A stretch of DNA of 64,000 nucleotides, taken from the sequence record MK250021.1; one strand, written 5' to 3'. Both the position numbers and the translations under genes were made by a program. Positions 23,972 to 56,799 of the stretch are shown here, piece after piece; within the stretch, counting starts at the first letter, position 1; every line of letters begins with the position of its first letter. The notes under the pieces were generated by a model. The model was not told the DNA's origin. It ran no database searches and saw only the letters and a program-made list of their open reading frames with translations.

Positions 23972-26026
23972 ATGAATAAGATTATTTTTTCTATGCTCAT
24001 TATGGTAATGAGTATTGCTAACATGTATGCAGAAAATGTTTCTGATACAGTGAAGTTGAAAGAGGTAACTGTTACTTCTCTTTTCCGTAATAATGTGCAG
24101 ACAGGTAGTATGATTAATACATCTACACTTAAGTCTTTGAATCATGGTCAGGGAACAGATTATGTATTGCAAAGACTTCCTAATATTTATGCGTATAATG
24201 ATAATGGAACACAAATGGGATACTGTTATTTCCGTATGCGTGGCATGGGTCAGGAACGTATGAATGTTACATTGGATGGAATGCCTTGGAACGAAGCAGA
24301 AGATTTTGGATGTTATTTTAGTAATTCTCCAGATCTTATGTCTTCTATGCATACTATTAAGGTAGAGAAAGGTGCATCTGTAACTAATAATGGAACAGCT
24401 GCTTATGCAGGAAATGTTTCTCTTGAATCTGTAGATTTGAAGAAAGATACCGATTCTTATTTTGACCTTGGATATGGTTCATTTAATTCATCTCGAATTA
24501 CAGGTGTTTATAATATGGGACAGAAAGGACATTGGGGATTACATGTTCGTGGCACTGCACAGCAAACTGATGGTTATAAGGAGAATACTTACAATAATTC
24601 GAAGGCAATTACTATTAAGACCGGATATTTCTTTAATGAACGACATTCATTGGATTTCTTGACAATGACTGGTTATCATAGGAATGGACAGGGATTTCAG
24701 GGAATTACTGAAGATTTAATTCCGAAGCATCCGACACCATTTAAGCAGATGATTTCAGGTAATCGTCAACAGGAAACAGATGATTTCTTAACAACTTATA
24801 ATAGGTTTCAATATAAGGGAGTTCTTTCAGACAAAGTATTTCTAACATCATCTGTGTATTGGCAACATCAGACAGGTAATTACCGTATTGGTTGGGATGA
24901 TGAGACACGACCAACAGGAAGTGTATTGAATAACTATCATCTTAATTATAATTTGACCGGATTTAACACTATTGTAAAGTATTATCCTATTGATAATCTT
25001 TCTCTTACATCTGGTGTAAATGCTTATGTATATCATCGTAGACATCAGGGATATGATATTACAAATTCTGATAGTATTATCACGGCATGGAAAAATCCAG
25101 GACTTACACCATATTATGATAACTCAGGAACAAAACCAGATGTGAATGTATTTGCAAATGTAAAGTATGCACCAGTAAATAAGTTCACTATTGATGCTGC
25201 TGTTCAATATCGTTATACGTCATTGCATTATCGTGTAAATACACCAATGGATGAATATGATACAAAGTTTAATCATGATTGGAATTTTGTAAATTACAGT
25301 ATTGGACTTAATTATGATATTGATAAGTATTCAAAGGTATATGCACGTTATGCTGTAACAAACCGTGAACCATCCAGAACTGATTTATTCTGTGCAGAGT
25401 ATCGTTCAAATGAATCGGAGATGAATACAAAGAATGAGAGAGTTCATGATATTGAAGCAGGTTATGAGATCCGTAACAATAAGGTTAATTTCAATATTAA
25501 TGGTTTTTATATGAATTTCAGTAATGAACTTGTTGCAACCGGTGAACTTTCAAAGATGAATGGTCTTCCATTGCATAAGCAACATGATGCATACCGTCTT
25601 GGATTGGAACTTGCCCTTGATTATAATCCTATTAATACATTGCATTTCATTGCAAATGCGGCATGGTCAGAGAATAAATTAAAGAATATTGAGGGTAAGG
25701 AAATGAATCATACATTCTCACCTTCATCTACATTGTTTGCTGAAGCTAATTATACGGTTAATAAAATTAAGTTTGGTTTGAATACAAATTTCCGTTCATC
25801 AATGTATATGGATATTTATAATAAGAATAAACTTAAGGAGAATCTTACGTTAAATGCTTATGTAAATGCACGAGTATCAAAGATCGTAGAGTTGAACCTT
25901 GTATTGAATAACATTACAAATAGGCTTAACTTCTCTAATGGCTCTGTAGATATTCCAACCAATACTGCATATTATTTGGTTGATACACCATTTAATATGT
26001 TCGCTTCTGCAAAGTTTCATTTTTAA
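23972..26026 (+). CDS. TonB-dependent outer membrane receptor (684 aa)
   Basis: Signal peptide, LKEVTVTS, plug domain (RMRGMGQERMNVTLDGMPWNEAED...SPDLMSS...VEKG...AYAGNVSL), amphipathic beta strands, C-terminal Phe (AKFHF); no TAG. Confidence 0.9.
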   Translation: MNKIIFSMLIMVMSIANMYAENVSDTVKLKEVTVTSLFRNNVQTGSMINTSTLKSLNHGQGTDYVLQRLPNIYAYNDNGTQMGYCYFRMRGMGQERMNVTLDGMPWNEAEDFGCYFSNSPDLMSSMHTIKVEKGASVTNNGTAAYAGNVSLESVDLKKDTDSYFDLGYGSFNSSRITGVYNMGQKGHWGLHVRGTAQQTDGYKENTYNNSKAITIKTGYFFNERHSLDFLTMTGYHRNGQGFQGITEDLIPKHPTPFKQMISGNRQQETDDFLTTYNRFQYKGVLSDKVFLTSSVYWQHQTGNYRIGWDDETRPTGSVLNNYHLNYNLTGFNTIVKYYPIDNLSLTSGVNAYVYHRRHQGYDITNSDSIITAWKNPGLTPYYDNSGTKPDVNVFANVKYAPVNKFTIDAAVQYRYTSLHYRVNTPMDEYDTKFNHDWNFVNYSIGLNYDIDKYSKVYARYAVTNREPSRTDLFCAEYRSNESEMNTKNERVHDIEAGYEIRNNKVNFNINGFYMNFSNELVATGELSKMNGLPLHKQHDAYRLGLELALDYNPINTLHFIANAAWSENKLKNIEGKEMNHTFSPSSTLFAEANYTVNKIKFGLNTNFRSSMYMDIYNKNKLKENLTLNAYVNARVSKIVELNLVLNNITNRLNFSNGSVDIPTNTAYYLVDTPFNMFASAKFHF

Positions 26027-30583: not shown

Positions 30584-30681
30584 GGTTATGTTACATAATG
30601 GTTAATGAGGTATCTAATTGATATTTTAATATCAATGGAAGAAAGGTATTGCGGTGACGGGTTCGAGTCCCTCCATAACCA
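30584..30681 (+). tRNA. non-canonical tRNA-like gene with a hairpin inserted in the anticodon loop
   Basis: Perfect 7-bp acceptor GGTTATG/CATAACC plus discriminator A; D-loop AATGGTTA; T-loop TTCGAGT with a bulged stem; the anticodon loop holds about 30 nt including an ATTGATA/TATCAAT hairpin; anticodon not assignable. Confidence 0.6.
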
Positions 30682-30901
30682 CTCCTTATAATAATGAAAA
30701 GGATGCAATTATCTAACATAGATATTATTATAGTATAAGAAATTATGATAATTCTTAAAATGATAATCAAGAGATTGAAGTAACTAATTAATGTATAGTT
30801 ACTAAGGCGAAAGTATAACTGCAATTATATTAGTAGTTGGCGTTTAAAAGATTGAAGAAAATTATTTGCAGATAATTTTTGGATTGATATTAAATGTAAA
30901 A

Positions 30902-30995
30902 ATTATAATAGTGTAGCGGGAATGCACGTTCGATGATAAATCGGAAAGGGATTAACGGTATGACGTTATTAAGGGTTCGACTCCCTCTTATAAAC
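30902..30995 (+). tRNA. degenerate tRNA-like gene with long variable arm
   Basis: A/T-only acceptor (6 of 7 pairs), D-arm GTGT/GCAC, anticodon arm TTCGA-TGATAAA-TCGGA lacking U33, variable hairpin AACG/CGTT, T-arm GGG-TTCGACT-CCC. Confidence 0.55.
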
Positions 30996-42251: not shown

Positions 42252-42294
42252 AAAATGGTGAATATTTAATTTTATGTTAAATATTCACCATTTT
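42252..42294. terminator. bidirectional intrinsic terminator
   Basis: AAAATGGTGAATATTTAA / TTAAATATTCACCATTTT between convergent genes. Confidence 0.75.
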
Positions 42295-42296
42295 TA

Positions 42297-42738
42297 TTAA
42301 TATGTAGATAATTCTTGTGTAAATGTACTTAATGCATCATCTATAGATGAAAACTCTCCAAATGATACTTCTGTATCAGGATCAGAAAATACTTCAAATT
42401 CGAAATCTATTTTATCAACAGGGCCAACGGCTAATGTATATGTTCCATTATTATTCTATTGAATAGTTAAATGACTATTTTCTCCTCCACAAAAATCATC
42501 GAATTTCTATTGTAAATTATAATTATTTGCAAATATTCTCAATAATGATTCTGGTTCTCTATGTGTACCTTTTGAACCTCTCATAATTCTAACTTCAGAT
42601 GAATTAAAATATGATAAAATTATTTTCTTTAAATTATTTAATAGGTATATTAGAGTTTTCATTAAGCGTTCTTTTTACAGTTTTTGAAACAGATTTCATT
42701 ATAGATTCATAAAGTGATTTCTTTTGATTTTTATTCAT
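42297..42738 (-). pseudogene. leader-bearing gene with +1 frame offset (or a 34-aa leader ORF overlapping a 121-aa ORF)
   Basis: ATG 42738 gives MNKNQKKSLYESIMKSVSKTVKRTLNENSNIPIK then TAA; the +1 frame (own ATG at 42662) runs to TAA 42297 through 2 TAG. Confidence 0.5.
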
Positions 42739-42821: not shown

Positions 42822-43259
42822 TCAAAATAGTGCTTCACATTTATTCTCTTTTATCGGGCACCAATTCTCAAAATCCCATTTGAAAAAATCAGTACATATA
42901 ATATTATGATTTATAATATCTGTTATTTTATCTGTAATTTCAAAATTATATTTTTTTATTAGTTTTATTAATCTTTCTTTTAATTCTTCTGTATTATCAT
43001 CCATTAATTCTGTTGCATAACATGTATTTATTGCATTTTCTACATCTGAAATATTATTACAATTTTTTAATCTTTGTTCAACGACATATAAAAATATATT
43101 ACCTATACCTGCGCAAGGGTCTAAAAAAGTTTTAGAGAAATCTGTAAATACTTCTGGTGTTTCTTCACATAATTTTTCAACTATATGTATTGGCGTAAAA
43201 TCTTCTTGTGTTATATGATGTCGTTCTTTTCGTTTTTGATTTATATCTTGCTATAACAT
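42822..43259 (-). CDS. stand-alone SAM-binding half of a DNA amino-methyltransferase (145 aa, TAG at codon 3)
   Basis: QEDFTPIHIV (motif X), TFLDPCAGIGN (motif I), YATEL (motif II), IICTDFF (motif III); no NPPY. Confidence 0.8.
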
Positions 43260-43282
43260 TATAAATATTATTAATTTCTAAT

Positions 43283-43290
43283 TATTTATA
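43283..43290 (-). promoter_or_regulatory. T4-like late promoter motif TATAAATA
   Basis: Exact T4 late consensus 24 nt upstream of the ATG at 43259; the AT-rich background weakens significance. Confidence 0.4.
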
Positions 43291-43315
43291 TTAGAGAATA
43301 TTCATATTGTTTATT

Positions 43316-43387
43316 TGTAAGGGTTATGGTGATATGATGAAGGATCATATTTATAGAGAAGGAATTACAAAAACAAATAATAATACT
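43316..43387 (+). repeat. outer inverted repeat, left arm (72 bp)
   Basis: Perfect reverse complement of 44330..44401. Confidence 0.9.
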
Positions 43388-43544
43388 CACTACTGTTTTT
43401 TTGCAGATATATGTGCAATAACAGGTCATGGCAATGAAAAAGCAATGTTATCTAATACTGCATATAAAGTATGTAAATATGGCGAATATTTAAATAGATA
43501 TACTGAAACACTTTGTCGATTAAGTAATACAGATACTTATAAAG

Positions 43545-43620
43545 TATATGGTACTAAAGATGAATTAGAAAATTGGAAATATTTTGTTTTTAATAATAAA
43601 TTACCATTATTTCTTAATAT
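43545..43620 (+). repeat. inner inverted repeat, left arm (76 bp)
   Basis: Perfect reverse complement of 44016..44091. Confidence 0.9.
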
Positions 43621-43825
43621 CGTGTTGACAATAAATCAGCATAATAATTCAAAAGACTATGTACCATGGTTTACTAATAAAAAATACACAGATAGTGAAA
43701 TATATAAAATATTAAATATTAATAATATTGAGCAATTATTAATTAACAAAATAATAATTAAGTTTGAAAGAAATAATACATGGTTTAAAAGATATATAAT
43801 AGGTATGTGATCTATTATATATCTT

Positions 43826-45172
43826 TTATTTTCCGCATATATATCGTTTAAACCAATTTGAATTTCTTTCGAATTTTTTAATTATATTATCCATAAATAA
43901 GATTTCATCATTATTAATATTTAATATTTTATATATTTCACTATCTGTGTATTGTTTATTTACAATCCATGGCATATATTGTTTAACAACATTATTTTGA
44001 TTAATAATTAAACATATATTAAGAAATAATGGTAATTTATTATTAAAAACAAAATATTTCCAATTTTCTAATTCATCTTTAGTACCATATAAACAATCAG
44101 CTATTTTATTAGTTTGATGTTTACCTTTATCATATTTAAAGGGTTTAATGTTATTTATATTATTCATATAATAATGAAAACAAGGTGATGTATATGAAGT
44201 AATAAATGAACCATATTTATGATTACAAAAATTTGATTCAGCTTCAAATTTTCCACCAACTTGTGAAGATTCAATACCACATAAGCTTCCACCTGTTCCT
44301 CCAAGTATTTCTGGATATTTACAGTAATAAGTATTATTATTTGTTTTTGTAATTCCTTCTCTATAAATATGATCCTTCATCATATCACCATAACCCTTAC
44401 ACTTATTTAAAATACTTTGTATAATATCATAATTACCGATAAGATTACAATCATTTATATTATCAACAATTTGTTTATCACCACAATTAATAAATTCAAT
44501 ATTATTAAATTCTTGTGAATTATCTATAAAAGTTATTGAACATGGAACATATTGTGAAATATTAAATGATTTATTATAATTTTCAATTATAATTTTTTTA
44601 ACATGGTTTTTAATACGATTTTTTAAGGGAATATACCATTTTTTATTATTTGGTATATCTTTTCTTAAATTAATAAGCCATGTAGATGGCTCAATAATTG
44701 TCATTTTCCCATTATTATTTAATATATCTAATCCCTTATTAAAAAATTCTAAATGTAAATTTGTATTTCTATTTGGTCCAACATAAGGTGGATTCTGAAT
44801 AATATAATCAAATTTAGGCATATTTTTTATATTTAATTTTATATAATTAAATATATTTTCTGCATCATATATATTTGTATATTTTAAATAATATATATTT
44901 TTACATATTTTACTATATTCTTTATATGTTTTTAGCACAAATATATTAAACATTTTATTAATTAAATTATCAATATAATTATAATCAATATCATTAAATG
45001 TTAAAAATACAATTTTACCATTATTATCATATAAATATTTTTTTAATGTAATAGTTTGTTCAATAAATTCAACAGAATCTATTGTTCCAAATAAATTATT
45101 AATTTTATGTAAAATACATAAACATGTTTTTACATTATTAAAATTTGATAATTCAGAAAATATTTTAATCAT
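43826..45172 (-). CDS. DNA adenine methyltransferase catalytic + target-recognition subunit (Eco57I-like; 448 aa)
   Basis: FDYIIQNPPY (motif IV), LHLEF, GKMTIIEPSTW; no clear motif I. Confidence 0.85.
   Translation of the reverse strand: MIKIFSELSNFNNVKTCLCILHKINNLFGTIDSVEFIEQTITLKKYLYDNNGKIVFLTFNDIDYNYIDNLINKMFNIFVLKTYKEYSKICKNIYYLKYTNIYDAENIFNYIKLNIKNMPKFDYIIQNPPYVGPNRNTNLHLEFFNKGLDILNNNGKMTIIEPSTWLINLRKDIPNNKKWYIPLKNRIKNHVKKIIIENYNKSFNISQYVPCSITFIDNSQEFNNIEFINCGDKQIVDNINDCNLIGNYDIIQSILNKCKGYGDMMKDHIYREGITKTNNNTYYCKYPEILGGTGGSLCGIESSQVGGKFEAESNFCNHKYGSFITSYTSPCFHYYMNNINNIKPFKYDKGKHQTNKIADCLYGTKDELENWKYFVFNNKLPLFLNICLIINQNNVVKQYMPWIVNKQYTDSEIYKILNINNDEILFMDNIIKKFERNSNWFKRYICGK
44016..44091 (-). 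repeat. inner inverted repeat, right arm (76 bp)
   Basis: Matches 43545..43620. Confidence 0.9.
44330..44401 (-). repeat. outer inverted repeat, right arm (72 bp)
   Basis: Matches 43316..43387. Confidence 0.9.
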
Positions 45173-45183
45173 AGTTATATTAT

Positions 45184-45918
45184 TTATACTTTATATTTTA
45201 TAATATTATCTATTGTTTGTTTAAATTCTTCCCAGAAATCATAATCATTTATATAATCATTTATAGTATTTCCATCGATAATTATGAGGTTTTCATATAA
45301 AGAATTATTTTCAAATGCTCTTTTATATTCATTATAATAAGCGGATGTAAATAATATTAATGTTTTGTCTTTTGTATTTTCTGGTGTAATAGGTTTAATA
45401 AATCCATTTTTTGTACCTTGTGCTAATAATTTATCCATTATATCTGCATGAATATCAAATTTTTTGGATGTTCTAAATTTTACTTGTATTACTCCATTTT
45501 TATTTTCTCCTAAACCTCTTCTATTTAATAAACATACAGCATCTACTCCATAATCTTTATAACTTTCTGGTGGTAAACATATATATTTAAATATATATGT
45601 TTCTACAGTATCTTTATCTTTTACGTGAATACTTATACTTTTAAAATAATTTAAAAATATAATACAGAATAATTCAAAAATATATCCTTTAAATTGTTCT
45701 TGCTCATCAATTATATTATTTTTTATTAATATATTATTTGTATATTCTGTAAAATCATCTATTGTATTAAATGATGTTATATCAGATAAATATTTTATAT
45801 TTAATATTATATTTAATATTTTTCGAGGTATACTTGTACTTTTATTTCTATACGTACTTTTATCTCTCCATCTTTTCAAAAAATTATCAAATGCATATAA
45901 TTCTTTAATATTAATCAT
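45184..45918 (-). CDS. PD-(D/E)XK restriction endonuclease-like subunit (Mrr-like; 244 aa)
   Basis: GYIFELFC...DYGVDAV...GVIQVKFR. Confidence 0.75.
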   Translation of the reverse strand: MINIKELYAFDNFLKRWRDKSTYRNKSTSIPRKILNIILNIKYLSDITSFNTIDDFTEYTNNILIKNNIIDEQEQFKGYIFELFCIIFLNYFKSISIHVKDKDTVETYIFKYICLPPESYKDYGVDAVCLLNRRGLGENKNGVIQVKFRTSKKFDIHADIMDKLLAQGTKNGFIKPITPENTKDKTLILFTSAYYNEYKRAFENNSLYENLIIIDGNTINDYINDYDFWEEFKQTIDNIIKYKV

Positions 45919-47576
45919 ATATCTATATTATTCTGTTTAAGAACTTCTTTAATTACATTAAGTCTATCTGTTTCATTAAATAAATTTAATGTATTTATAT
46001 TTGTTGATAAAGTAGCAAAATTACACATTTTATATATACTATTTAAATTTATATATCCACCATTTATTTTTAATTCTTTAACAACAGGAATAATTCTATT
46101 TTTAAGTTCTTCTTGCAAATTTAGTTTTAATTCATCTATACGTTGTTTAATTTCTATGATTGGCGATTTTTCCTTATAATCTGTTGTATTATAATTATCA
46201 TATCGTTTTAATGGATTTTTTGGATGTGAAATATTATCAGATATATTATCATATAAAATATTATCTATACCATAATATTCAACAATTGTACTTGATATAT
46301 TTTTATTATATTCATCATTACCATTAGATACTATATATACATTAGCGAATTTTTTAATTCTATCATTATATGATTTCCCTCTTTCTCCTGAGTTTGTTCT
46401 CAAGCAACGACCAATTATTTGTATAATTCTATTTTTTGAATCGCTATCACCATTTGTATTATTGACTATAATGCAATCAGATATTGATTTAATATCAATC
46501 CCTTGAATAAGTTTTCGACAATGAAATATTATACAATTATCATTATATGAATCTACTTTATTACAAAAATCATTAATTTCGTAATCATCATCAGATGTAT
46601 TTTTAAAACATTTATAATATTTTGAACATTTATTGTATAATTCTGTTGCTTGCTGTCTACTAAAACATGTAACTAATAATTTATTATTTTTTGTATTTTT
46701 TGATTTAATAGCATCATTCATACAGGCAATTATAATTTTATCAGTAATAATACCATTTGAAGTGATATTAAATTTTACATATGGTTTTATTATAATATTA
46801 TCTTTAATTGCATTATCTGCAGATATATTTACAATACGTTCATCTTCTGGAACGTTTATTTTACCTGATAATTTATTTTTATTTATAATATTATTAAATA
46901 GTTTTACAAAAATACTTGGTGTTGCAGAAAAACCATATAATTTATAACTATTTTTTACTAATTTATCAAAATTTATATTATTTGAAAATAAATTTGTAGT
47001 ATTATCTATTACAGTATGACATTCATCAATATATGTAATTAAATCTACTTTCTTTTTATTAATTTTTACATTATCAATAAATTTATATAATGATTTATTA
47101 CATGATGAAACTAAAGCAATATCATAATCGCTATTTTCAAAATTATCTAATACAGTCTTAGACGATTTTGAATTATTATATAATTGATAAATTTCTATAT
47201 TATTATTAATATTATCATTTACAGGTTTTTCATATATTCTTGTTTCATCTGATGAATTTAATATTAATAATAATTTATAATTATTTAATACATTATTACA
47301 TTTTCCTAATACATTTAAAAAATCAGTAAATGTTTGGACATTTAAATTTAATATGTGTGAACATATACAAATAATAAGTTTCTTGGATGCCTTTTTATTT
47401 TGTATATTGTATATACAATCATCAAATATATATCCAGATTTCCCATATCCAGTAGGCATAACAACTGTACCAAAATTCCTACCAGTAGATGCAATAATAT
47501 CAATTTTTCTTAATCCATTATTAAATGAATCTATATACCATTGCATTTTATTGTCTATATTATTTGTTGTATTCAT
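45915..47576 (-). CDS. SF2 DExH helicase/translocase (Type III/ISP Res-like; 553 aa)
   Basis: MPTGYGKS, IDECH, FSATP, KLIQGID, QIIGRCLR. Confidence 0.85.
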   Translation of the reverse strand: MNTTNNIDNKMQWYIDSFNNGLRKIDIIASTGRNFGTVVMPTGYGKSGYIFDDCIYNIQNKKASKKLIICICSHILNLNVQTFTDFLNVLGKCNNVLNNYKLLLILNSSDETRIYEKPVNDNINNNIEIYQLYNNSKSSKTVLDNFENSDYDIALVSSCNKSLYKFIDNVKINKKKVDLITYIDECHTVIDNTTNLFSNNINFDKLVKNSYKLYGFSATPSIFVKLFNNIINKNKLSGKINVPEDERIVNISADNAIKDNIIIKPYVKFNITSNGIITDKIIIACMNDAIKSKNTKNNKLLVTCFSRQQATELYNKCSKYYKCFKNTSDDDYEINDFCNKVDSYNDNCIIFHCRKLIQGIDIKSISDCIIVNNTNGDSDSKNRIIQIIGRCLRTNSGERGKSYNDRIKKFANVYIVSNGNDEYNKNISSTIVEYYGIDNILYDNISDNISHPKNPLKRYDNYNTTDYKEKSPIIEIKQRIDELKLNLQEELKNRIIPVVKELKINGGYINLNSIYKMCNFATLSTNINTLNLFNETDRLNVIKEVLKQNNIDI

Positions 47577-47619: not shown

Positions 47620-47629
47620 CAAAGATACA
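47620..47629 (-). promoter_or_regulatory. Bacteroidota-type -7 promoter element
   Basis: TGTATCTTTG upstream of the helicase. Confidence 0.65.
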
Positions 47630-47685
47630 TATTATTTTCTAAAATAAAAAATGATAGATTAGAAAATCTATCATTTTAATATTAT

Positions 47686-54795: not shown

Positions 54796-56799
54796 TCAAA
54801 GACCTGCAACATCTACACAGAATGTAAGATATTGTGTTTCTGGATAGAAACCAGCGTCTACAAGAGCATATCTTGATTTTATCATAAGCTTAGGACTCAT
54901 TGTACCTTCTGCAATAATCTGAACTGATTCAGCCATTACATATGGACAGAAGTGAACACCTGGTTCATCCTTGCCACCCTTACGACCAACAAGTACACGG
55001 TTATCAGAACCACCCATAAGAGGGTCAACATAGATTGTCAAACCGAACATACCACCGATTGGATAAAGTGAACCGCCATTCTGAGAAATAGTGTTAGCAA
55101 CAGGTGAGAATGTATAGTTAGCGTTACTCTGAAGGAGTGTAGCGATTGTGATGTTAGTTACAGCGAATGTAGCTGCACCATAACGACCTCTCTGAAGAAT
55201 CCAGTTAGAAGCAGCCAAGAAGTTAACAGCAAGTCTCTTAAGAAGAGTATCACGGTTTTCGAAAGCTGCGCCAGAAGGAATATACATTGGCTTGTATGGA
55301 AGAGCAACATTTACATAGCTCTTATAAGCAACACCAGTTGCATCATTCATATCTGACTGAGGAATTGCAAGAGCAGGAGTCATACGAACACCAGAAGTTG
55401 CAGTATAAGAAGGATCGAAGCTAAGATTCAAGTTAGCTGCAGGACCTTCAACCTCAACAAGTTTGTAATGGTTCTTCCAACCAAGAGCGAACAAACGAGA
55501 TGTGATGTGACGGTTAATAGTTGCAGAAAGCTCGTTGATACCAGCATTCTCTACCATCTTGATAACATCGATACCCCATTGTTTCTGAAGGTCTGTTACC
55601 TGTTCCTGTGTTACAGCGCAACCCACCATAATTGTACCAACCTGTACGTTCTTTGTGAACAACTGAAGTGAAAGTTGACGAGCCATTGTTTGCTCACCAG
55701 TACCACGACTCATTGGTTCATAAAGTGTTGTACCATCCTGATATGTACCATACCAAGCGTCACGATCACGCTCACCAGCACCTGTGAAACCTTGAATTTG
55801 ATCCTCAAGCATTGAGATAAGACGAGGAGCGTGAAGTGTAAGAACTACATTTACTTCCTCAGAAGAACCAACTGGAGTATAAACTGCAGTAAAATCAAGT
55901 GAACCACCATTGAAATATGCACCAAGTGACTGTGTACCAGAAACCACCTTGAACATAGGATCACCATCGATACGAGACCAACCAATGAACTCAACTACAA
56001 GTTCGTTAGAAGCACCTACATGTGGATGAGAAGAATCGAAATCTACAAAATCAGATGCAGATACAAGTGTTGTACCAGCAGGCATTGCAGAAGCACCCTT
56101 CAACATACGCTTAATCTGTGCAGGAGACAACTTAACAGCAGTAGAAGAATCTGTTGTAGAACCATCAGCAACAGTAGCCTCACCAGGAGCAATAGAAGCC
56201 TTGAATGAATGAGGAAGACCATACATCTCGAAAGGAGCGTTAGTCTGAGAGTTAGCCTGAGGATTCTGTGTACGAGCTGAATAAGCAGGAGTAGCACCAT
56301 AAGGTTGCTTTGAACCTGAATATACATAATCCATATAAGGAAGAACACCGGTAGGACCATCAAGTGGAGTTGTGTTTACAAGTTCGAAACCGATAGTCTT
56401 AGCAGCGACCTTAAGAGCAAGAGGTAACAAAGTAGGATACTTGTCACCAGAACCAAGGTTCTTGTTATCAGCGTAGTCAGCGCCAGTCAAAGCAGGTTTG
56501 CCAGCAGGAACTGGATCACCAACACCGAGTGTATTATAAAGGTTGTTATATGGTTGATATGTACCACCGAACTGTGAATATGCGTTAGATGGCATTACGA
56601 ATGCATCCTCATTCAACTTTGCTGTATTATGTGCAAGCTGAGACATCCAAGCAAGTTTATCAGCATCTTCAACACCTGTGATTTTCTTAATAGTAGGTGC
56701 CCATGATTCATAGATAGCTTTGTCGCTATTCTTAGCAGTTGCACGATTTACATATGATTCGTAAGCCTATGCAACAGACTTATTACTTTTTACTTTCAT
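54796..56799 (-). CDS. major capsid protein, T4 gp23-like (667 aa; single TAG at codon 11)
   Basis: LLPLALKVAAKTIGFELVNTTPLDGPTG, AGINELSATINRHI, YCPY-like HFCPY, SRYAL; upstream frame is open to ATG 56799 (MKVKSNKSVA*AYESY...ESWAPTIKK), matching the gp23-like propeptide. Confidence 0.92.

What the first reader, a model, noticed from the sequence alone, without database searches (positions are those of the whole stretch)
42822..43290. SAM-binding subunit appears temporally gated separately from the rest of its system
Seen: the helicase, nuclease and catalytic genes have no TAG and sit behind a host-type TAnnTTTG promoter (47620). The SAM-binding gene has TAG at codon 3, no ATG again until after motif I, and an exact TATAAATA 24 nt upstream. 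In either inversion state an antisense cassette separates it from the operon, so it needs its own promoter. Inference: nuclease and TRD are made early, while complete methyltransferase activity appears only after the code switch. That would give an early restriction-only phase and late modification of progeny DNA.
Basis: inference. Interest (0 to 1): 0.65.

Follow-up and report, generated by a model that had tools for sequence, protein, structure and literature searches.

The report
Recoding-gated SAM-binding half of split methylase
In a Lak megaphage, the small gene for the cofactor-binding half of a split DNA methylase needs the phage's TAG-to-glutamine code switch and has a 'recoded-class' promoter, while the helicase, nuclease and catalytic/target-recognition genes do not, so the enzyme's parts are probably made at different times, though no expression data exist.

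Summary
The window is Prevotella phage Lak-B2, which reads TAG as glutamine. ORF 42822-43259 (-) has TAG at codon 3 and no ATG/GTG/TTG before codon 86. TATAAATA lies 23 nt upstream of its ATG. The helicase, Mrr-like nuclease and methylase/TRD genes (43826-47576) have 27 Gln codons and no TAG.

The ORF is a real gene under selection (dN/dS 0.18-0.27). It encodes motifs X, I, II and III of a gamma-type N6-adenine methylase. It belongs to a widespread phage family of split methylases with permuted gene order: a large subunit (motif IV to TRD) followed by a small SAM-binding subunit.

Across 314 kb of the genome, two upstream motifs separate the coding classes. ATAAATA precedes 35/57 TAG-rich lead genes against 12/93 TAG-free ones. 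TATCTTTG precedes 0/57 against 20/93. The operon carries the second motif and the small gene the first.

N-terminal TAGs recur in the small gene of four related lineages and are absent in three. Lak-B7 carries the TRD segment 43316-44401 inverted.

One complication: the large subunit is predicted to have its own degenerate N-half. Temporal gating is supported by sequence class only. A 'restriction-only early phase' remains inference.

The parts
42822..43259 (-). Small subunit gene (145 aa, P0001). It encodes the SAM-binding N-half of a gamma-type N6-adenine DNA methylase (motifs X, I, II, III). TAG (read as Gln) is at codon 3 (43253-43251).
   Evidence: Translation. PHROG 21201 'DNA methyltransferase' E 1.6e-16. 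TIGR02987 positions 7-104, E 7.8e-5. AF2 pLDDT 94.8. Best fold match is CamA residues 13-193, Z 11.3, followed by DrdV, MmeI and BrxX N-halves. dN/dS 0.18-0.27.
43283..43290 (-). TATAAATA, 23 nt before the ATG. It is a member of the ATAAATA motif class that precedes TAG-rich genes.
   Evidence: Sequence. ATAAATA found upstream of 35/57 TAG>=2 lead genes against 12/93 TAG-free, p 1.3e-9, peaking 30-39 nt upstream. Conserved at the same distance in relative L032.
43307..43810 (+). Silent, promoterless antisense cassette. It holds an alternative C-terminal TRD segment of the large subunit.
   Evidence: The translation shares blocks with P0002 residues from about 257 to the end. Inverted repeats.
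43316..44401 (.). Invertible segment (TRD shufflon) bounded by 111-nt inverted repeats. An inner 277-nt repeat pair lies at 43522-43798 / 43838-44114.
   Evidence: Lak-B7 carries exactly this segment in the opposite orientation at 100% identity.
43826..45172 (-). Large subunit (448 aa, P0002). It consists of a degenerate N-half (residues 1-120), motif IV FDYIIQNPPY (residues 121-130), the rest of the catalytic half, and a TaqI/CamA-like TRD. It has no TAG.
   Evidence: Pfam Eco57I over residues 59-170. AF2 pLDDT 91.4, pTM 0.90. Fold matches: HsdM Z 13.1, CamA Z 12.7, TaqI Z 12.4, LlaBIII Z 11.6, all aligned from residue 1.
45184..45918 (-). 244-aa protein (P0003), a probable Mrr-like PD-(D/E)xK nuclease. 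It has no TAG.
   Evidence: No Pfam, NCBIfam, PHROG or PADLOC hit. Atlas leads by features (0.92-0.95) and by structure (TM 0.57-0.67) point to Mrr_cat_2/Mrr_cat clusters. This is a lead, not a proof.
45915..47576 (-). SF2 helicase (553 aa, P0004) of ResIII type. It has no TAG.
   Evidence: Pfam ResIII 1.5e-7, DEAD, Helicase_C.
47620..47627 (-). TATCTTTG, within atgTATCTTTGca. This is the motif class found only before TAG-free or TAG-poor genes. It matches the Bacteroidetes -7 consensus TAnnTTTG.
   Evidence: TATCTTTG found upstream of 20/93 TAG-free lead genes against 0/57 TAG-rich, p 3.5e-5. Conserved before the helicase gene in L032, L033, L034, L035 and L030.
47653..47672 (-). AT-rich hairpin (8-bp stem) followed by a T-run. 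It is a likely terminator of the upstream gene and sets the operon apart as its own transcription unit.
   Evidence: Read. The consensus scan did not call it because the stem lacks G-C pairs.
42252..42294 (-). Strong terminator-like hairpin after the next gene downstream (42297-42662, 121 aa, 2 TAG, unknown function). It is the likely end of the transcription unit that contains the small subunit gene.

Best explanation
The ORF at 42822-43259 is a functional gene for the SAM-binding half (motifs X-I-II-III) of a split N6-adenine DNA methylase with permuted gene order.

Its partner is the 448-aa protein upstream, which carries NPPY, the rest of the catalytic half and an invertible target-recognition domain. 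That partner is co-operonic with an SF2 helicase and a probable Mrr-like nuclease. Together these are the parts list of a Type ISP-like restriction-modification enzyme, spread over separate polypeptides.

The three operon genes are written without TAG and sit behind a Bacteroidetes-type promoter (TATCTTTG). The host machinery can therefore express them on entry.

The small gene is separated from the operon by the antisense TRD cassette. It has the ATAAATA-type upstream element typical of TAG-rich genes, and its third codon is TAG. Full-length protein can therefore be made only once the phage's TAG-to-Gln suppression is active.

The likely result is that the helicase, nuclease and recognition parts accumulate first, and SAM-dependent methylation is enabled after the code switch. 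In Lak phages that switch probably coincides with the replication phase.

Shown: the gene's identity, its selection, its dependence on TAG, the two motif classes, and the natural inversion. Inferred: that the classes are temporal, that the two proteins assemble, and what the small-subunit-free complex does.
For: Identity of the window:
- It is Lak-B2.
- TAG=Q is supported by a non-recoded homologue (L012) that has Gln where the B4-type gene has TAG.

A split family exists:
- Short-form large subunits begin at motif IV (P0074, MQFDYIIQNPPY...). Each is followed by a 131-aa gene that ends just after motif III.
- Aeromonas phage Ah1 gp104/gp103 form the same pair.
- Natural fusions have the order IV...TRD...X-I-II-III (P0192, P0250).
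- PHROG 11371 places the domain C-terminally.
- The small-protein family has 712 clusters, nearly all stand-alone proteins of 100-240 aa.

Folds.

Selection: dN/dS 0.18-0.27.

The start is at 43259: relatives all begin ATG TTA, and the first 20 residues align.

Class evidence:
- 0 TAG in 27 operon Gln codons, against 40% TAG use in TAG-using genes.
- Motif enrichments.
- TATCTTTG is conserved before the helicase gene in 6 relatives.

Recurrent N-terminal TAGs in the small gene:
- B2 at codon 3; L033 at codons 3 and 16; L034 at codons 9 and 18; B4/A2/L011 at codon 9.
- The operon genes are TAG-free in all six relatives tallied, and in L034 as well.

Co-inheritance: the recombination boundary between B2-type and B4-type modules lies inside the small gene, near 42980.

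Published model: standard-code genes are expressed first and recoded genes after the switch. Lak phages encode tRNA(CUA) and RF2 (PMC8346664).
Against: - No expression data of any kind exist. No sequencing run was listed.
- The small gene has no TAG in L032 (a close Lak relative, codon 3 = GAA), L030 or L035. The gate is therefore not essential to the system.
- Lak-A2's fused helicase-methylase has 19 TAGs.
- Four of the five Gln residues of the protein lie in the first 18 residues. An N-terminal TAG is thus partly expected from composition. Conditional probabilities are only 0.16, 0.16 and 0.033 per lineage.
- 14 of 117 TAG-free lead genes also carry ATAAATA, for example the topoisomerase IV-A-like gene. 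The motif is therefore not exclusive.
- The large subunit is predicted to be a complete Rossmann fold by itself. Its own N-half sits where the small subunit would dock.
- In L030 and L034 motif I of the small protein lacks GxG.
- The complex prediction could not be run.
- An invertible TRD combined with restriction before methylation would endanger a genome that has just switched specificity.
Confidence: 0.55

Rival explanations
1. Incidental TAG. The small gene belongs to the recoded class because it was separated from the operon and acquired an ATAAATA promoter. A Gln or Glu codon in its tolerant N-terminal leader then drifted to TAG. The TAG has no adaptive gating role, and no functionally distinct 'restriction-only' phase exists.
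For: - L032, L030 and L035 lack the TAG; L032 has GAA at codon 3.
- Gln residues are concentrated in the leader, so per-lineage probabilities are modest.
- 35% of all ORFs carry TAG.
- The switch may be early, because Lak replication genes are mostly recoded.
Against: - TAGs recur in four lineages and always fall within the first 18 codons.
- This includes B4-type and L034, where the gene lies inside an otherwise TAG-free operon of about 1,300 codons.
- A codon-3 TAG is shared by B2 and L033 across dS of about 1.5.
Confidence: 0.3
2. The small protein is dispensable or decaying in this long-form system. The 448-aa protein has a complete fold and works, or only recognises DNA, on its own. The small gene would then be a leftover of the ancestral split arrangement.
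For: - P0002 is predicted as a full Rossmann fold from residue 1.
- Motif I is degenerate in the L030 and L034 small proteins.
- In L035 the small gene lies 2.8 kb away from the large one.
Against: - dN/dS is 0.18-0.27, with motifs X, I and II intact in B2, L032, L033, L035 and the B4 type.
- The cis N-half has no Gly loop and no conserved residue in 59 homologues.
- The small gene's 5' two-thirds is exchanged together with the operon.
Confidence: 0.1
3. Translation starts after the TAG at a non-canonical codon, or the ORF is a pseudogene.
For: ATA codons exist at positions 6 and 16. Many single N-terminal TAGs in my ORF calls are probably mis-called starts.
Against: - There is no ATG, GTG or TTG before codon 86.
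- The ATG-TTA start is conserved in seven relatives.
- The gene is under purifying selection.
- The TAG is identical in Lak-B2, B7 and B8.
Confidence: 0.04

Closest known systems
Type ISP restriction-modification enzymes (LlaGI, LlaBIII)
   Same: Same set of modules: Mrr-like nuclease, SF2 helicase-like motor, gamma-type N6-adenine methylase and C-terminal TRD. The P0002 and P0001 models both align to LlaBIII/LlaGI methylase regions (Z 11.6 and about 7).
   Different: Here the modules are separate polypeptides in the order helicase, nuclease, methylase/TRD. The methylase is split and its SAM-binding half is encoded last. The TRD is invertible. The system is phage-borne. No activity has been tested.
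Natural two-subunit DNA methylases (M.AquI, M.EcoHK31I; recalled from my own knowledge, not checked here) and engineered split M.SssI (PMC3404938, listed)
   Same: A single methylase fold is assembled from two polypeptides.
   Different: Those are C5-cytosine enzymes, and their subunit genes are not in different coding or promoter classes. This family is N6-adenine and is split between motifs III and IV. The catalytic half is encoded first.
Beta-class (permuted) amino-methylases such as Type III Mod (M.EcoP15I)
   Same: Linear order catalytic motif IV ... TRD ... SAM-binding motifs X-I-III. This order is seen in the gene order here and in the natural fusions P0192 and P0250.
   Different: By sequence and fold the family is nearest to gamma-type enzymes (Eco57I Pfam; CamA, TaqI, MmeI). 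The permutation therefore looks independent. In Lak-B2 the large subunit keeps a degenerate copy of the N-half, as an intermediate of a duplication-deletion route might.
Stop-codon recoding as a timer of late or lytic genes (Borges et al., preprint 10.1101/2021.08.26.457843)
   Same: TAG-free genes are translatable by host machinery. TAG-containing genes are blocked until suppressor tRNA/RF2 act. Lak is one of the clades described there.
   Different: The paper discusses structural, lysis and replication genes. It contains no occurrence of 'methyltransferase' or 'restriction'. Here the two classes cut through one enzyme system and are accompanied by two distinct upstream motifs.
Phase-variable Type I hsdS shufflons
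   Same: Inverted repeats inside TRD-coding sequence plus a silent antisense cassette. Both orientations are found in natural isolates.
   Different: No tyrosine or serine recombinase was detected anywhere in the 550-kb genome. The TRD is fused to the catalytic half of the methylase and is not a separate S subunit.

Membership tests
SAM-binding N-half of gamma-type N6-adenine DNA methylases | Motif X (FTP-helix), motif I (D/E-P-x-x-G-x-G), motif II acidic residue after beta-2, and motif III D after beta-3 | tested here: met
   FTPIHIV, FLDPCAGIGN, YATE and CTDFF are present. T22, G51 and N89 are invariant, and F21, P23, G53 and D88 near-invariant, in 73 homologues.
SAM-binding N-half of gamma-type N6-adenine DNA methylases | Half-Rossmann fold superposable on the N-half of solved enzymes | tested here: met
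   AF2 pLDDT 94.8 with beta-1, beta-2 and beta-3. Matches: CamA 13-193 Z 11.3 (131 aligned, rmsd 4.9), DrdV Z 9.3, MmeI Z 9.2, BrxX Z 9.1.
SAM-binding N-half of gamma-type N6-adenine DNA methylases | Binds S-adenosylmethionine | not testable with these tools
   No biochemical data exist.
Split, gene-order-permuted phage methylase pair (large IV-VIII+TRD, then small X-III) | The small gene lies downstream of, and on the same strand as, a gene encoding NPPY plus TRD | tested here: met
   Seen in B2 (with the cassette between), B4, L030, L032, L033, L034, L026, Ah1, L010, L012, L015, L018 and L022.
Split, gene-order-permuted phage methylase pair (large IV-VIII+TRD, then small X-III) | The large subunit lacks its own N-half | tested here: not met
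   This is true of short forms (P0074 starts at motif IV). P0002, however, has a predicted degenerate beta-1 to beta-3 half at residues 1-120.
Split, gene-order-permuted phage methylase pair (large IV-VIII+TRD, then small X-III) | The two proteins form a complex | not tested
Type ISP restriction-modification | Mrr-like nuclease, SF2 motor, gamma methylase and TRD all present | tested here: inconclusive
   Motor and methylase/TRD are supported. The nuclease rests on Atlas leads only. All parts are separate polypeptides rather than one chain.
Type ISP restriction-modification | ATP-dependent translocation and cleavage of unmodified DNA | not testable with these tools
   No data exist.
Recoding-timed gene (Borges model) | An in-frame recoded stop that must be read through, in a phage that has TAG-free and TAG-using gene sets | tested here: met
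Recoding-timed gene (Borges model) | Expression is delayed relative to TAG-free genes | not testable with these tools
   No RNA or protein data exist. None was listed.
T4-type late promoter (TATAAATA) | Exact TATAAATA at a fixed short distance before late genes | tested here: inconclusive
   The positional peak at 30-39 nt and the association with TAG-rich genes are clear. The motif is also found before 14 TAG-free genes. No gp55-like factor was sought, and transcription starts are unknown.
Inversion shufflon of a TRD | Inverted repeats, a silent cassette, and both orientations observed | tested here: met
Inversion shufflon of a TRD | A dedicated site-specific recombinase | tested here: not met
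   PF00239 and PF00589 were not found in the whole record.

The most novel reading that the evidence does not exclude
A phage uses its genetic-code switch to assemble one enzyme in two steps.

Before the switch, the large subunit is kept folded by a built-in, SAM-blind pseudo-half. It works with the helicase and nuclease as a recognition and cleavage machine against unmethylated (host or rival) DNA.

After the switch, the TAG-gated small subunit supplies a real SAM pocket, by displacing or complementing the pseudo-half. This turns on methylation just as phage DNA replicates.

A single N-terminal TAG would then be a general, cheap 'gate' codon in Lak phages. The major capsid gene shows the same pattern.
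Probability: 0.18. Interest if true: 0.85.

Novelty: new variant of a known kind. Interest (0 to 1): 0.63.

Why it matters
Stop-codon recoding as a timer of phage gene expression is still a hypothesis built on gene-content patterns. This locus gives it a compact, testable case. One enzyme system is cut by the code boundary, and the cut coincides with a change of promoter class.

The work also brings out three further points:
- A large, apparently undescribed family of split phage DNA methylases with permuted gene order and a stand-alone SAM-binding subunit.
- Two upstream motif classes that partition a 550-kb megaphage genome by codon usage.
- A natural TRD inversion in a phage-borne restriction-modification-like module.

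The protein parts can be tested by heterologous expression, even though Lak phages are uncultivated.

Tried and rejected
There is therefore no support or verdict on binding.
- The look-up of sequencing runs listed no run.
- No whole genome is held for this window. I fetched 250 kb more of the public record and analysed 314 kb in total.
- PDB sequence searches for P0001 and for the P0002 family found nothing useful.
- PADLOC gave only weak generic methylase hits.
- Resolvase and tyrosine-recombinase searches of the whole record were negative.
- DNA_pol_A was absent. The DNA_pol_B fragments lay outside the analysed part of the genome and had no stops in the matched stretches. I could therefore not verify for myself that replication genes carry TAG and rely on the preprint's statement.
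- ARAGORN found no tRNA(CUA) in the first 314 kb.
- I rejected the idea that P0002's first 120 residues are an unrelated accessory domain, because they align as the N-half of solved methylases.
- I rejected a downstream start.
- The small gene in L034 is interrupted by a run of N. I left it as it is and used only its first 64 codons.
- The genome-wide excess of TAG in the first tenth of ORFs (103 against about 63 per decile) is confounded by my longest-ORF start calls. I do not use it as evidence.

Full report
**What the window is.**
- The 5.5 kb around the finding are 100% identical to Prevotella phage Lak-B2 (MK250021) at the same coordinates, and to Lak-B8. Lak-B7 is 97% identical, in three aligned pieces.
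- Many long ORFs open only when TAG is read as an amino acid.
- In a non-recoded relative (L012) a Gln stands exactly where the B4-type small gene has TAG.
- Lak phages are reported to read TAG as Gln and to encode tRNA(CUA) and RF2 (PMC8346664).

**Check of the observation.**
- Under table 11 the frame is open only from M86 (42822-43004).
- With TAG=Q the ORF is 42822-43259, 145 aa, with one TAG at codon 3.
- The protein carries motif X (FTPIHIV), motif I (FLDPCAGIGN), motif II and motif III. It stops about 20 residues after motif III and has no NPPY.
- TATAAATA lies at 43290-43283, 23 nt before the ATG.
- The helicase (ResIII/DEAD/Helicase_C), the 244-aa protein and the 448-aa NPPY protein (Pfam Eco57I) contain no TAG.
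- TAtcTTTG lies at 47627-47620, 51 nt before the helicase start. It follows a hairpin plus T-run that ends the upstream gene.
- Between the NPPY gene and the small gene lies an antisense partial copy of the NPPY protein's C-terminal region, with 111-nt and 277-nt inverted repeats.
- Lak-B7 has 43316-44401 in the opposite orientation at 100% identity. The inversion therefore happens in nature, and an antisense cassette is present in both states.

**What the small gene is.**
- It hits PHROG 21201 ('DNA methyltransferase', 1.6e-16) and the first 100 positions of TIGR02987.
- Its AF2 model (pLDDT 94.8) is a helical cap plus beta-1, beta-2 and beta-3.
- The model superposes best on the N-terminal SAM-binding part of CamA (residues 13-193, Z 11.3), then on DrdV, MmeI and BrxX.
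- An exhaustive profile-free search found 712 clusters of relatives. Nearly all are stand-alone proteins of 100-240 aa.

**The split, permuted family.** In phages from several lineages the small gene directly follows a gene encoding NPPY plus a TaqI/CamA-like TRD.
- Examples are Aeromonas phage Ah1 gp104/gp103, cyanophage-like contigs, and several gut phages.
- The clearest case is L026. The large protein P0074 begins MQFDYIIQNPPY, that is, at motif IV. The next gene (131 aa) encodes X-I-II-III and ends right after motif III. Neither half can be a methylase alone.
- Natural fusions exist in the permuted order IV...TRD...X-I-II-III (P0192, P0250), and PHROG 11371 places the domain at a C-terminus.
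- A conventionally ordered relative also exists (P0136).
- The gene is under purifying selection: dN/dS is 0.23 for B2-L032 and 0.18 for B4-A2.
- The recombination boundary between the B2-type and B4-type modules falls inside the small gene near 42980. Its 5' two-thirds therefore travel with the operon.

**The system as a whole.**
- The same four genes (helicase about 540 aa, a protein of about 250 aa, large subunit about 450 aa, small subunit about 150 aa) recur in other megaphages: L030 (Wendovervirus sonii), L032, L033, L034 and L035.
- The 244-aa protein has no family hit. Atlas neighbours by features and by structure are Mrr_cat/Mrr_cat_2 nucleases. I treat this as a lead only.
- Nuclease, SF2 motor, gamma methylase and TRD together make the parts list of Type ISP enzymes, here as separate chains.

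**A complication found here.**
- The AF2 model of the large subunit (pLDDT 91.4, pTM 0.90) shows beta-alpha-beta-alpha-beta in residues 1-120, leading into beta-4 (FDYIIQN).
- It aligns from residue 1 with complete methylase domains: HsdM Z 13.1, CamA Z 12.7 (chain 37-577), TaqI Z 12.4 (chain 28-413).
- This cis N-half has no Gly-rich loop and no conserved residue among 59 homologues.
- It occupies the same structural place that the small subunit matches.
- Short forms lack it. Long forms look like an intermediate of a duplication-deletion route to permutation.
- How the intact trans half and the degenerate cis half coexist is unknown. The complex prediction could not be run.

**Is the TAG inside the coding sequence?** Yes.
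- All relatives start ATG TTA, and the following 20 residues align (MLxxD...RKERHHITQEDFTP).
- Lak-B2, B7 and B8 share the TAG.
- There is no canonical start before codon 86.

**Two regulatory classes.** I analysed 314 kb of Lak-B2 (window).
- I called 350 ORFs, of which 122 carry TAG.
- In TAG-using genes 40% of Gln codons are TAG. The operon has 27 Gln codons and none is TAG.
- An unbiased k-mer comparison covered positions -60 to -15 upstream of lead genes. ATAAATA occurs in 35/57 TAG>=2 genes against 12/93 TAG-free genes (p 1.3e-9). TATCTTTG, usually as TGTATCTTTG, occurs in 0/57 against 20/93 (p 3.5e-5).
- ATAAATA peaks 30-39 nt before the ATG. TATCTTTG spreads over 30-60 nt.
- TATCTTTG fits the Bacteroides -7 consensus TAnnTTTG (for example PMC4747536).
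- TATAAATA is the T4 late promoter (my own knowledge), and Lak-B2 has a gp23-like capsid gene.
- The operon carries the first motif, conserved before the helicase gene in six relatives.
- The small gene carries the second, conserved in L032.
- The association is strong but not absolute. 14 of 117 TAG-free lead genes, including a topoisomerase IV-A-like gene, have ATAAATA.

**Recurrence of the TAG.** TAG positions in the small gene are:

| Lineage | TAG codons in small gene |
|---|---|
| B2/B7/B8 | 3 |
| L033 | 3 and 16 |
| L034 | 9 and 18 |
| B4/A2/L011 type | 9 |
| L032, L030, L035 | none |

- In B4-type and L034 the gene abuts the large-subunit gene with no motif of its own. It is then the only TAG-bearing gene of a roughly 1,300-codon TAG-free operon.
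- All six TAGs lie in the first 18 codons. Gln residues are also concentrated there, so the conditional probabilities are modest: 0.16, 0.16 and 0.033.
- Lak-A2 has a different, fused helicase-methylase with 19 TAGs.

**Interpretation.**
- Its core inference is that the SAM-binding part belongs to a different expression class from the rest. Codon usage, promoter motif and comparative recurrence all support this.
- That the classes are temporal rests on the published model and on the host-like character of TATCTTTG.
- 'Late' should probably read 'after the switch'. The preprint says Lak replication genes are mostly recoded, so methylation competence would arrive with replication, which is when it is needed.
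- Whether a complex without the small subunit cleaves DNA is unknown. The cis pseudo-half offers a way for it to be stable.
- An invertible TRD sits uneasily with restriction before methylation, because a freshly switched genome would be unprotected. This remains unexplained.
- A read-through operon RNA would form a roughly 280-bp hairpin across the cassette. No terminator was predicted before the small gene, so its separate promoter is likely but not proven.

**Literature.**
- Neither the Borges preprint nor the Lak diversity paper mentions methyltransferase or restriction. The diversity paper was also searched for inversion and promoter and has neither.
- A recent methylase classification preprint does not describe split N6-adenine enzymes of this kind.
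- My searches were limited to the held library.

Noticed in passing
314 kb of Lak-B2 (window 1-64000 plus L005-L009): Two upstream motif classes partition the genome by codon usage. (A/T)ATAAATA lies 30-39 nt before the start of TAG-rich genes. TGTATCTTTG lies 30-60 nt before TAG-free genes. The second is never seen before genes with two or more TAGs.
   Followed up: yes
window 43316-44401: This is an invertible TRD segment. Lak-B7 carries it in the opposite orientation at 100% identity. No serine or tyrosine recombinase was found in the whole 550-kb record.
   Followed up: partly
window 43826-45172 (-), residues 1-120 of the product: The large methylase subunit keeps a degenerate, unconserved N-half of the Rossmann fold. 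Abundant short-form relatives lack it. It looks like an intermediate of permutation by duplication and deletion.
   Followed up: partly
window 54796-56799 (-): The T4 gp23-like major capsid gene (667 codons) has a single TAG, at codon 11. The next in-frame start is at codon 52. This is the same 'one N-terminal TAG' pattern as the small subunit gene.
   Followed up: partly
window near 42980 (inside the small gene): DNA identity to Lak-B4, B1 and B9 (94-96%) stops here. The restriction-modification-like module, including the 5' two-thirds of the small gene, is a swapped cassette among Lak-B genomes.
   Followed up: partly
window 23972-26026 (+): A TAG-free gene in a GC-richer stretch encodes a TonB-dependent receptor-like protein (Plug plus beta-barrel). 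This is unusual for a phage.
   Followed up: no
window 30584-30682 and 30902-30995 (+): Two unusually long tRNA-like genes (99 and 94 nt) were called Ile(GAT) and Tyr(AUA) by ARAGORN. No tRNA(CUA) was found in the first 314 kb.
   Followed up: partly
L035 9220-10301: In this relative the small subunit gene lies 2.8 kb downstream of the large one. It sits next to a Resolvase-family gene and an IS605 OrfB/TnpB-like gene.
   Followed up: no
L030 6365-6832 and L034 6419-6816: In the Wendovervirus-type lineage motif I of the small protein reads DPCAG-(V/I)FY, without GxG. The L034 copy is interrupted by an assembly gap of N, which I did not fill.
   Followed up: no
window 42297-42662 (-): A 121-aa ORF with two TAGs and no known family follows the small subunit gene. 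It is followed by a strong terminator at 42294-42252, so the two genes may be co-transcribed.
   Followed up: no
L002 107-3997 (Lak-A2): At the syntenic place Lak-A2 has a 1296-aa fused helicase-methylase with 19 TAGs. Two antisense ORFs and a B4-type small gene follow it. This is a different version of the module, written entirely in the recoded class.
   Followed up: partly
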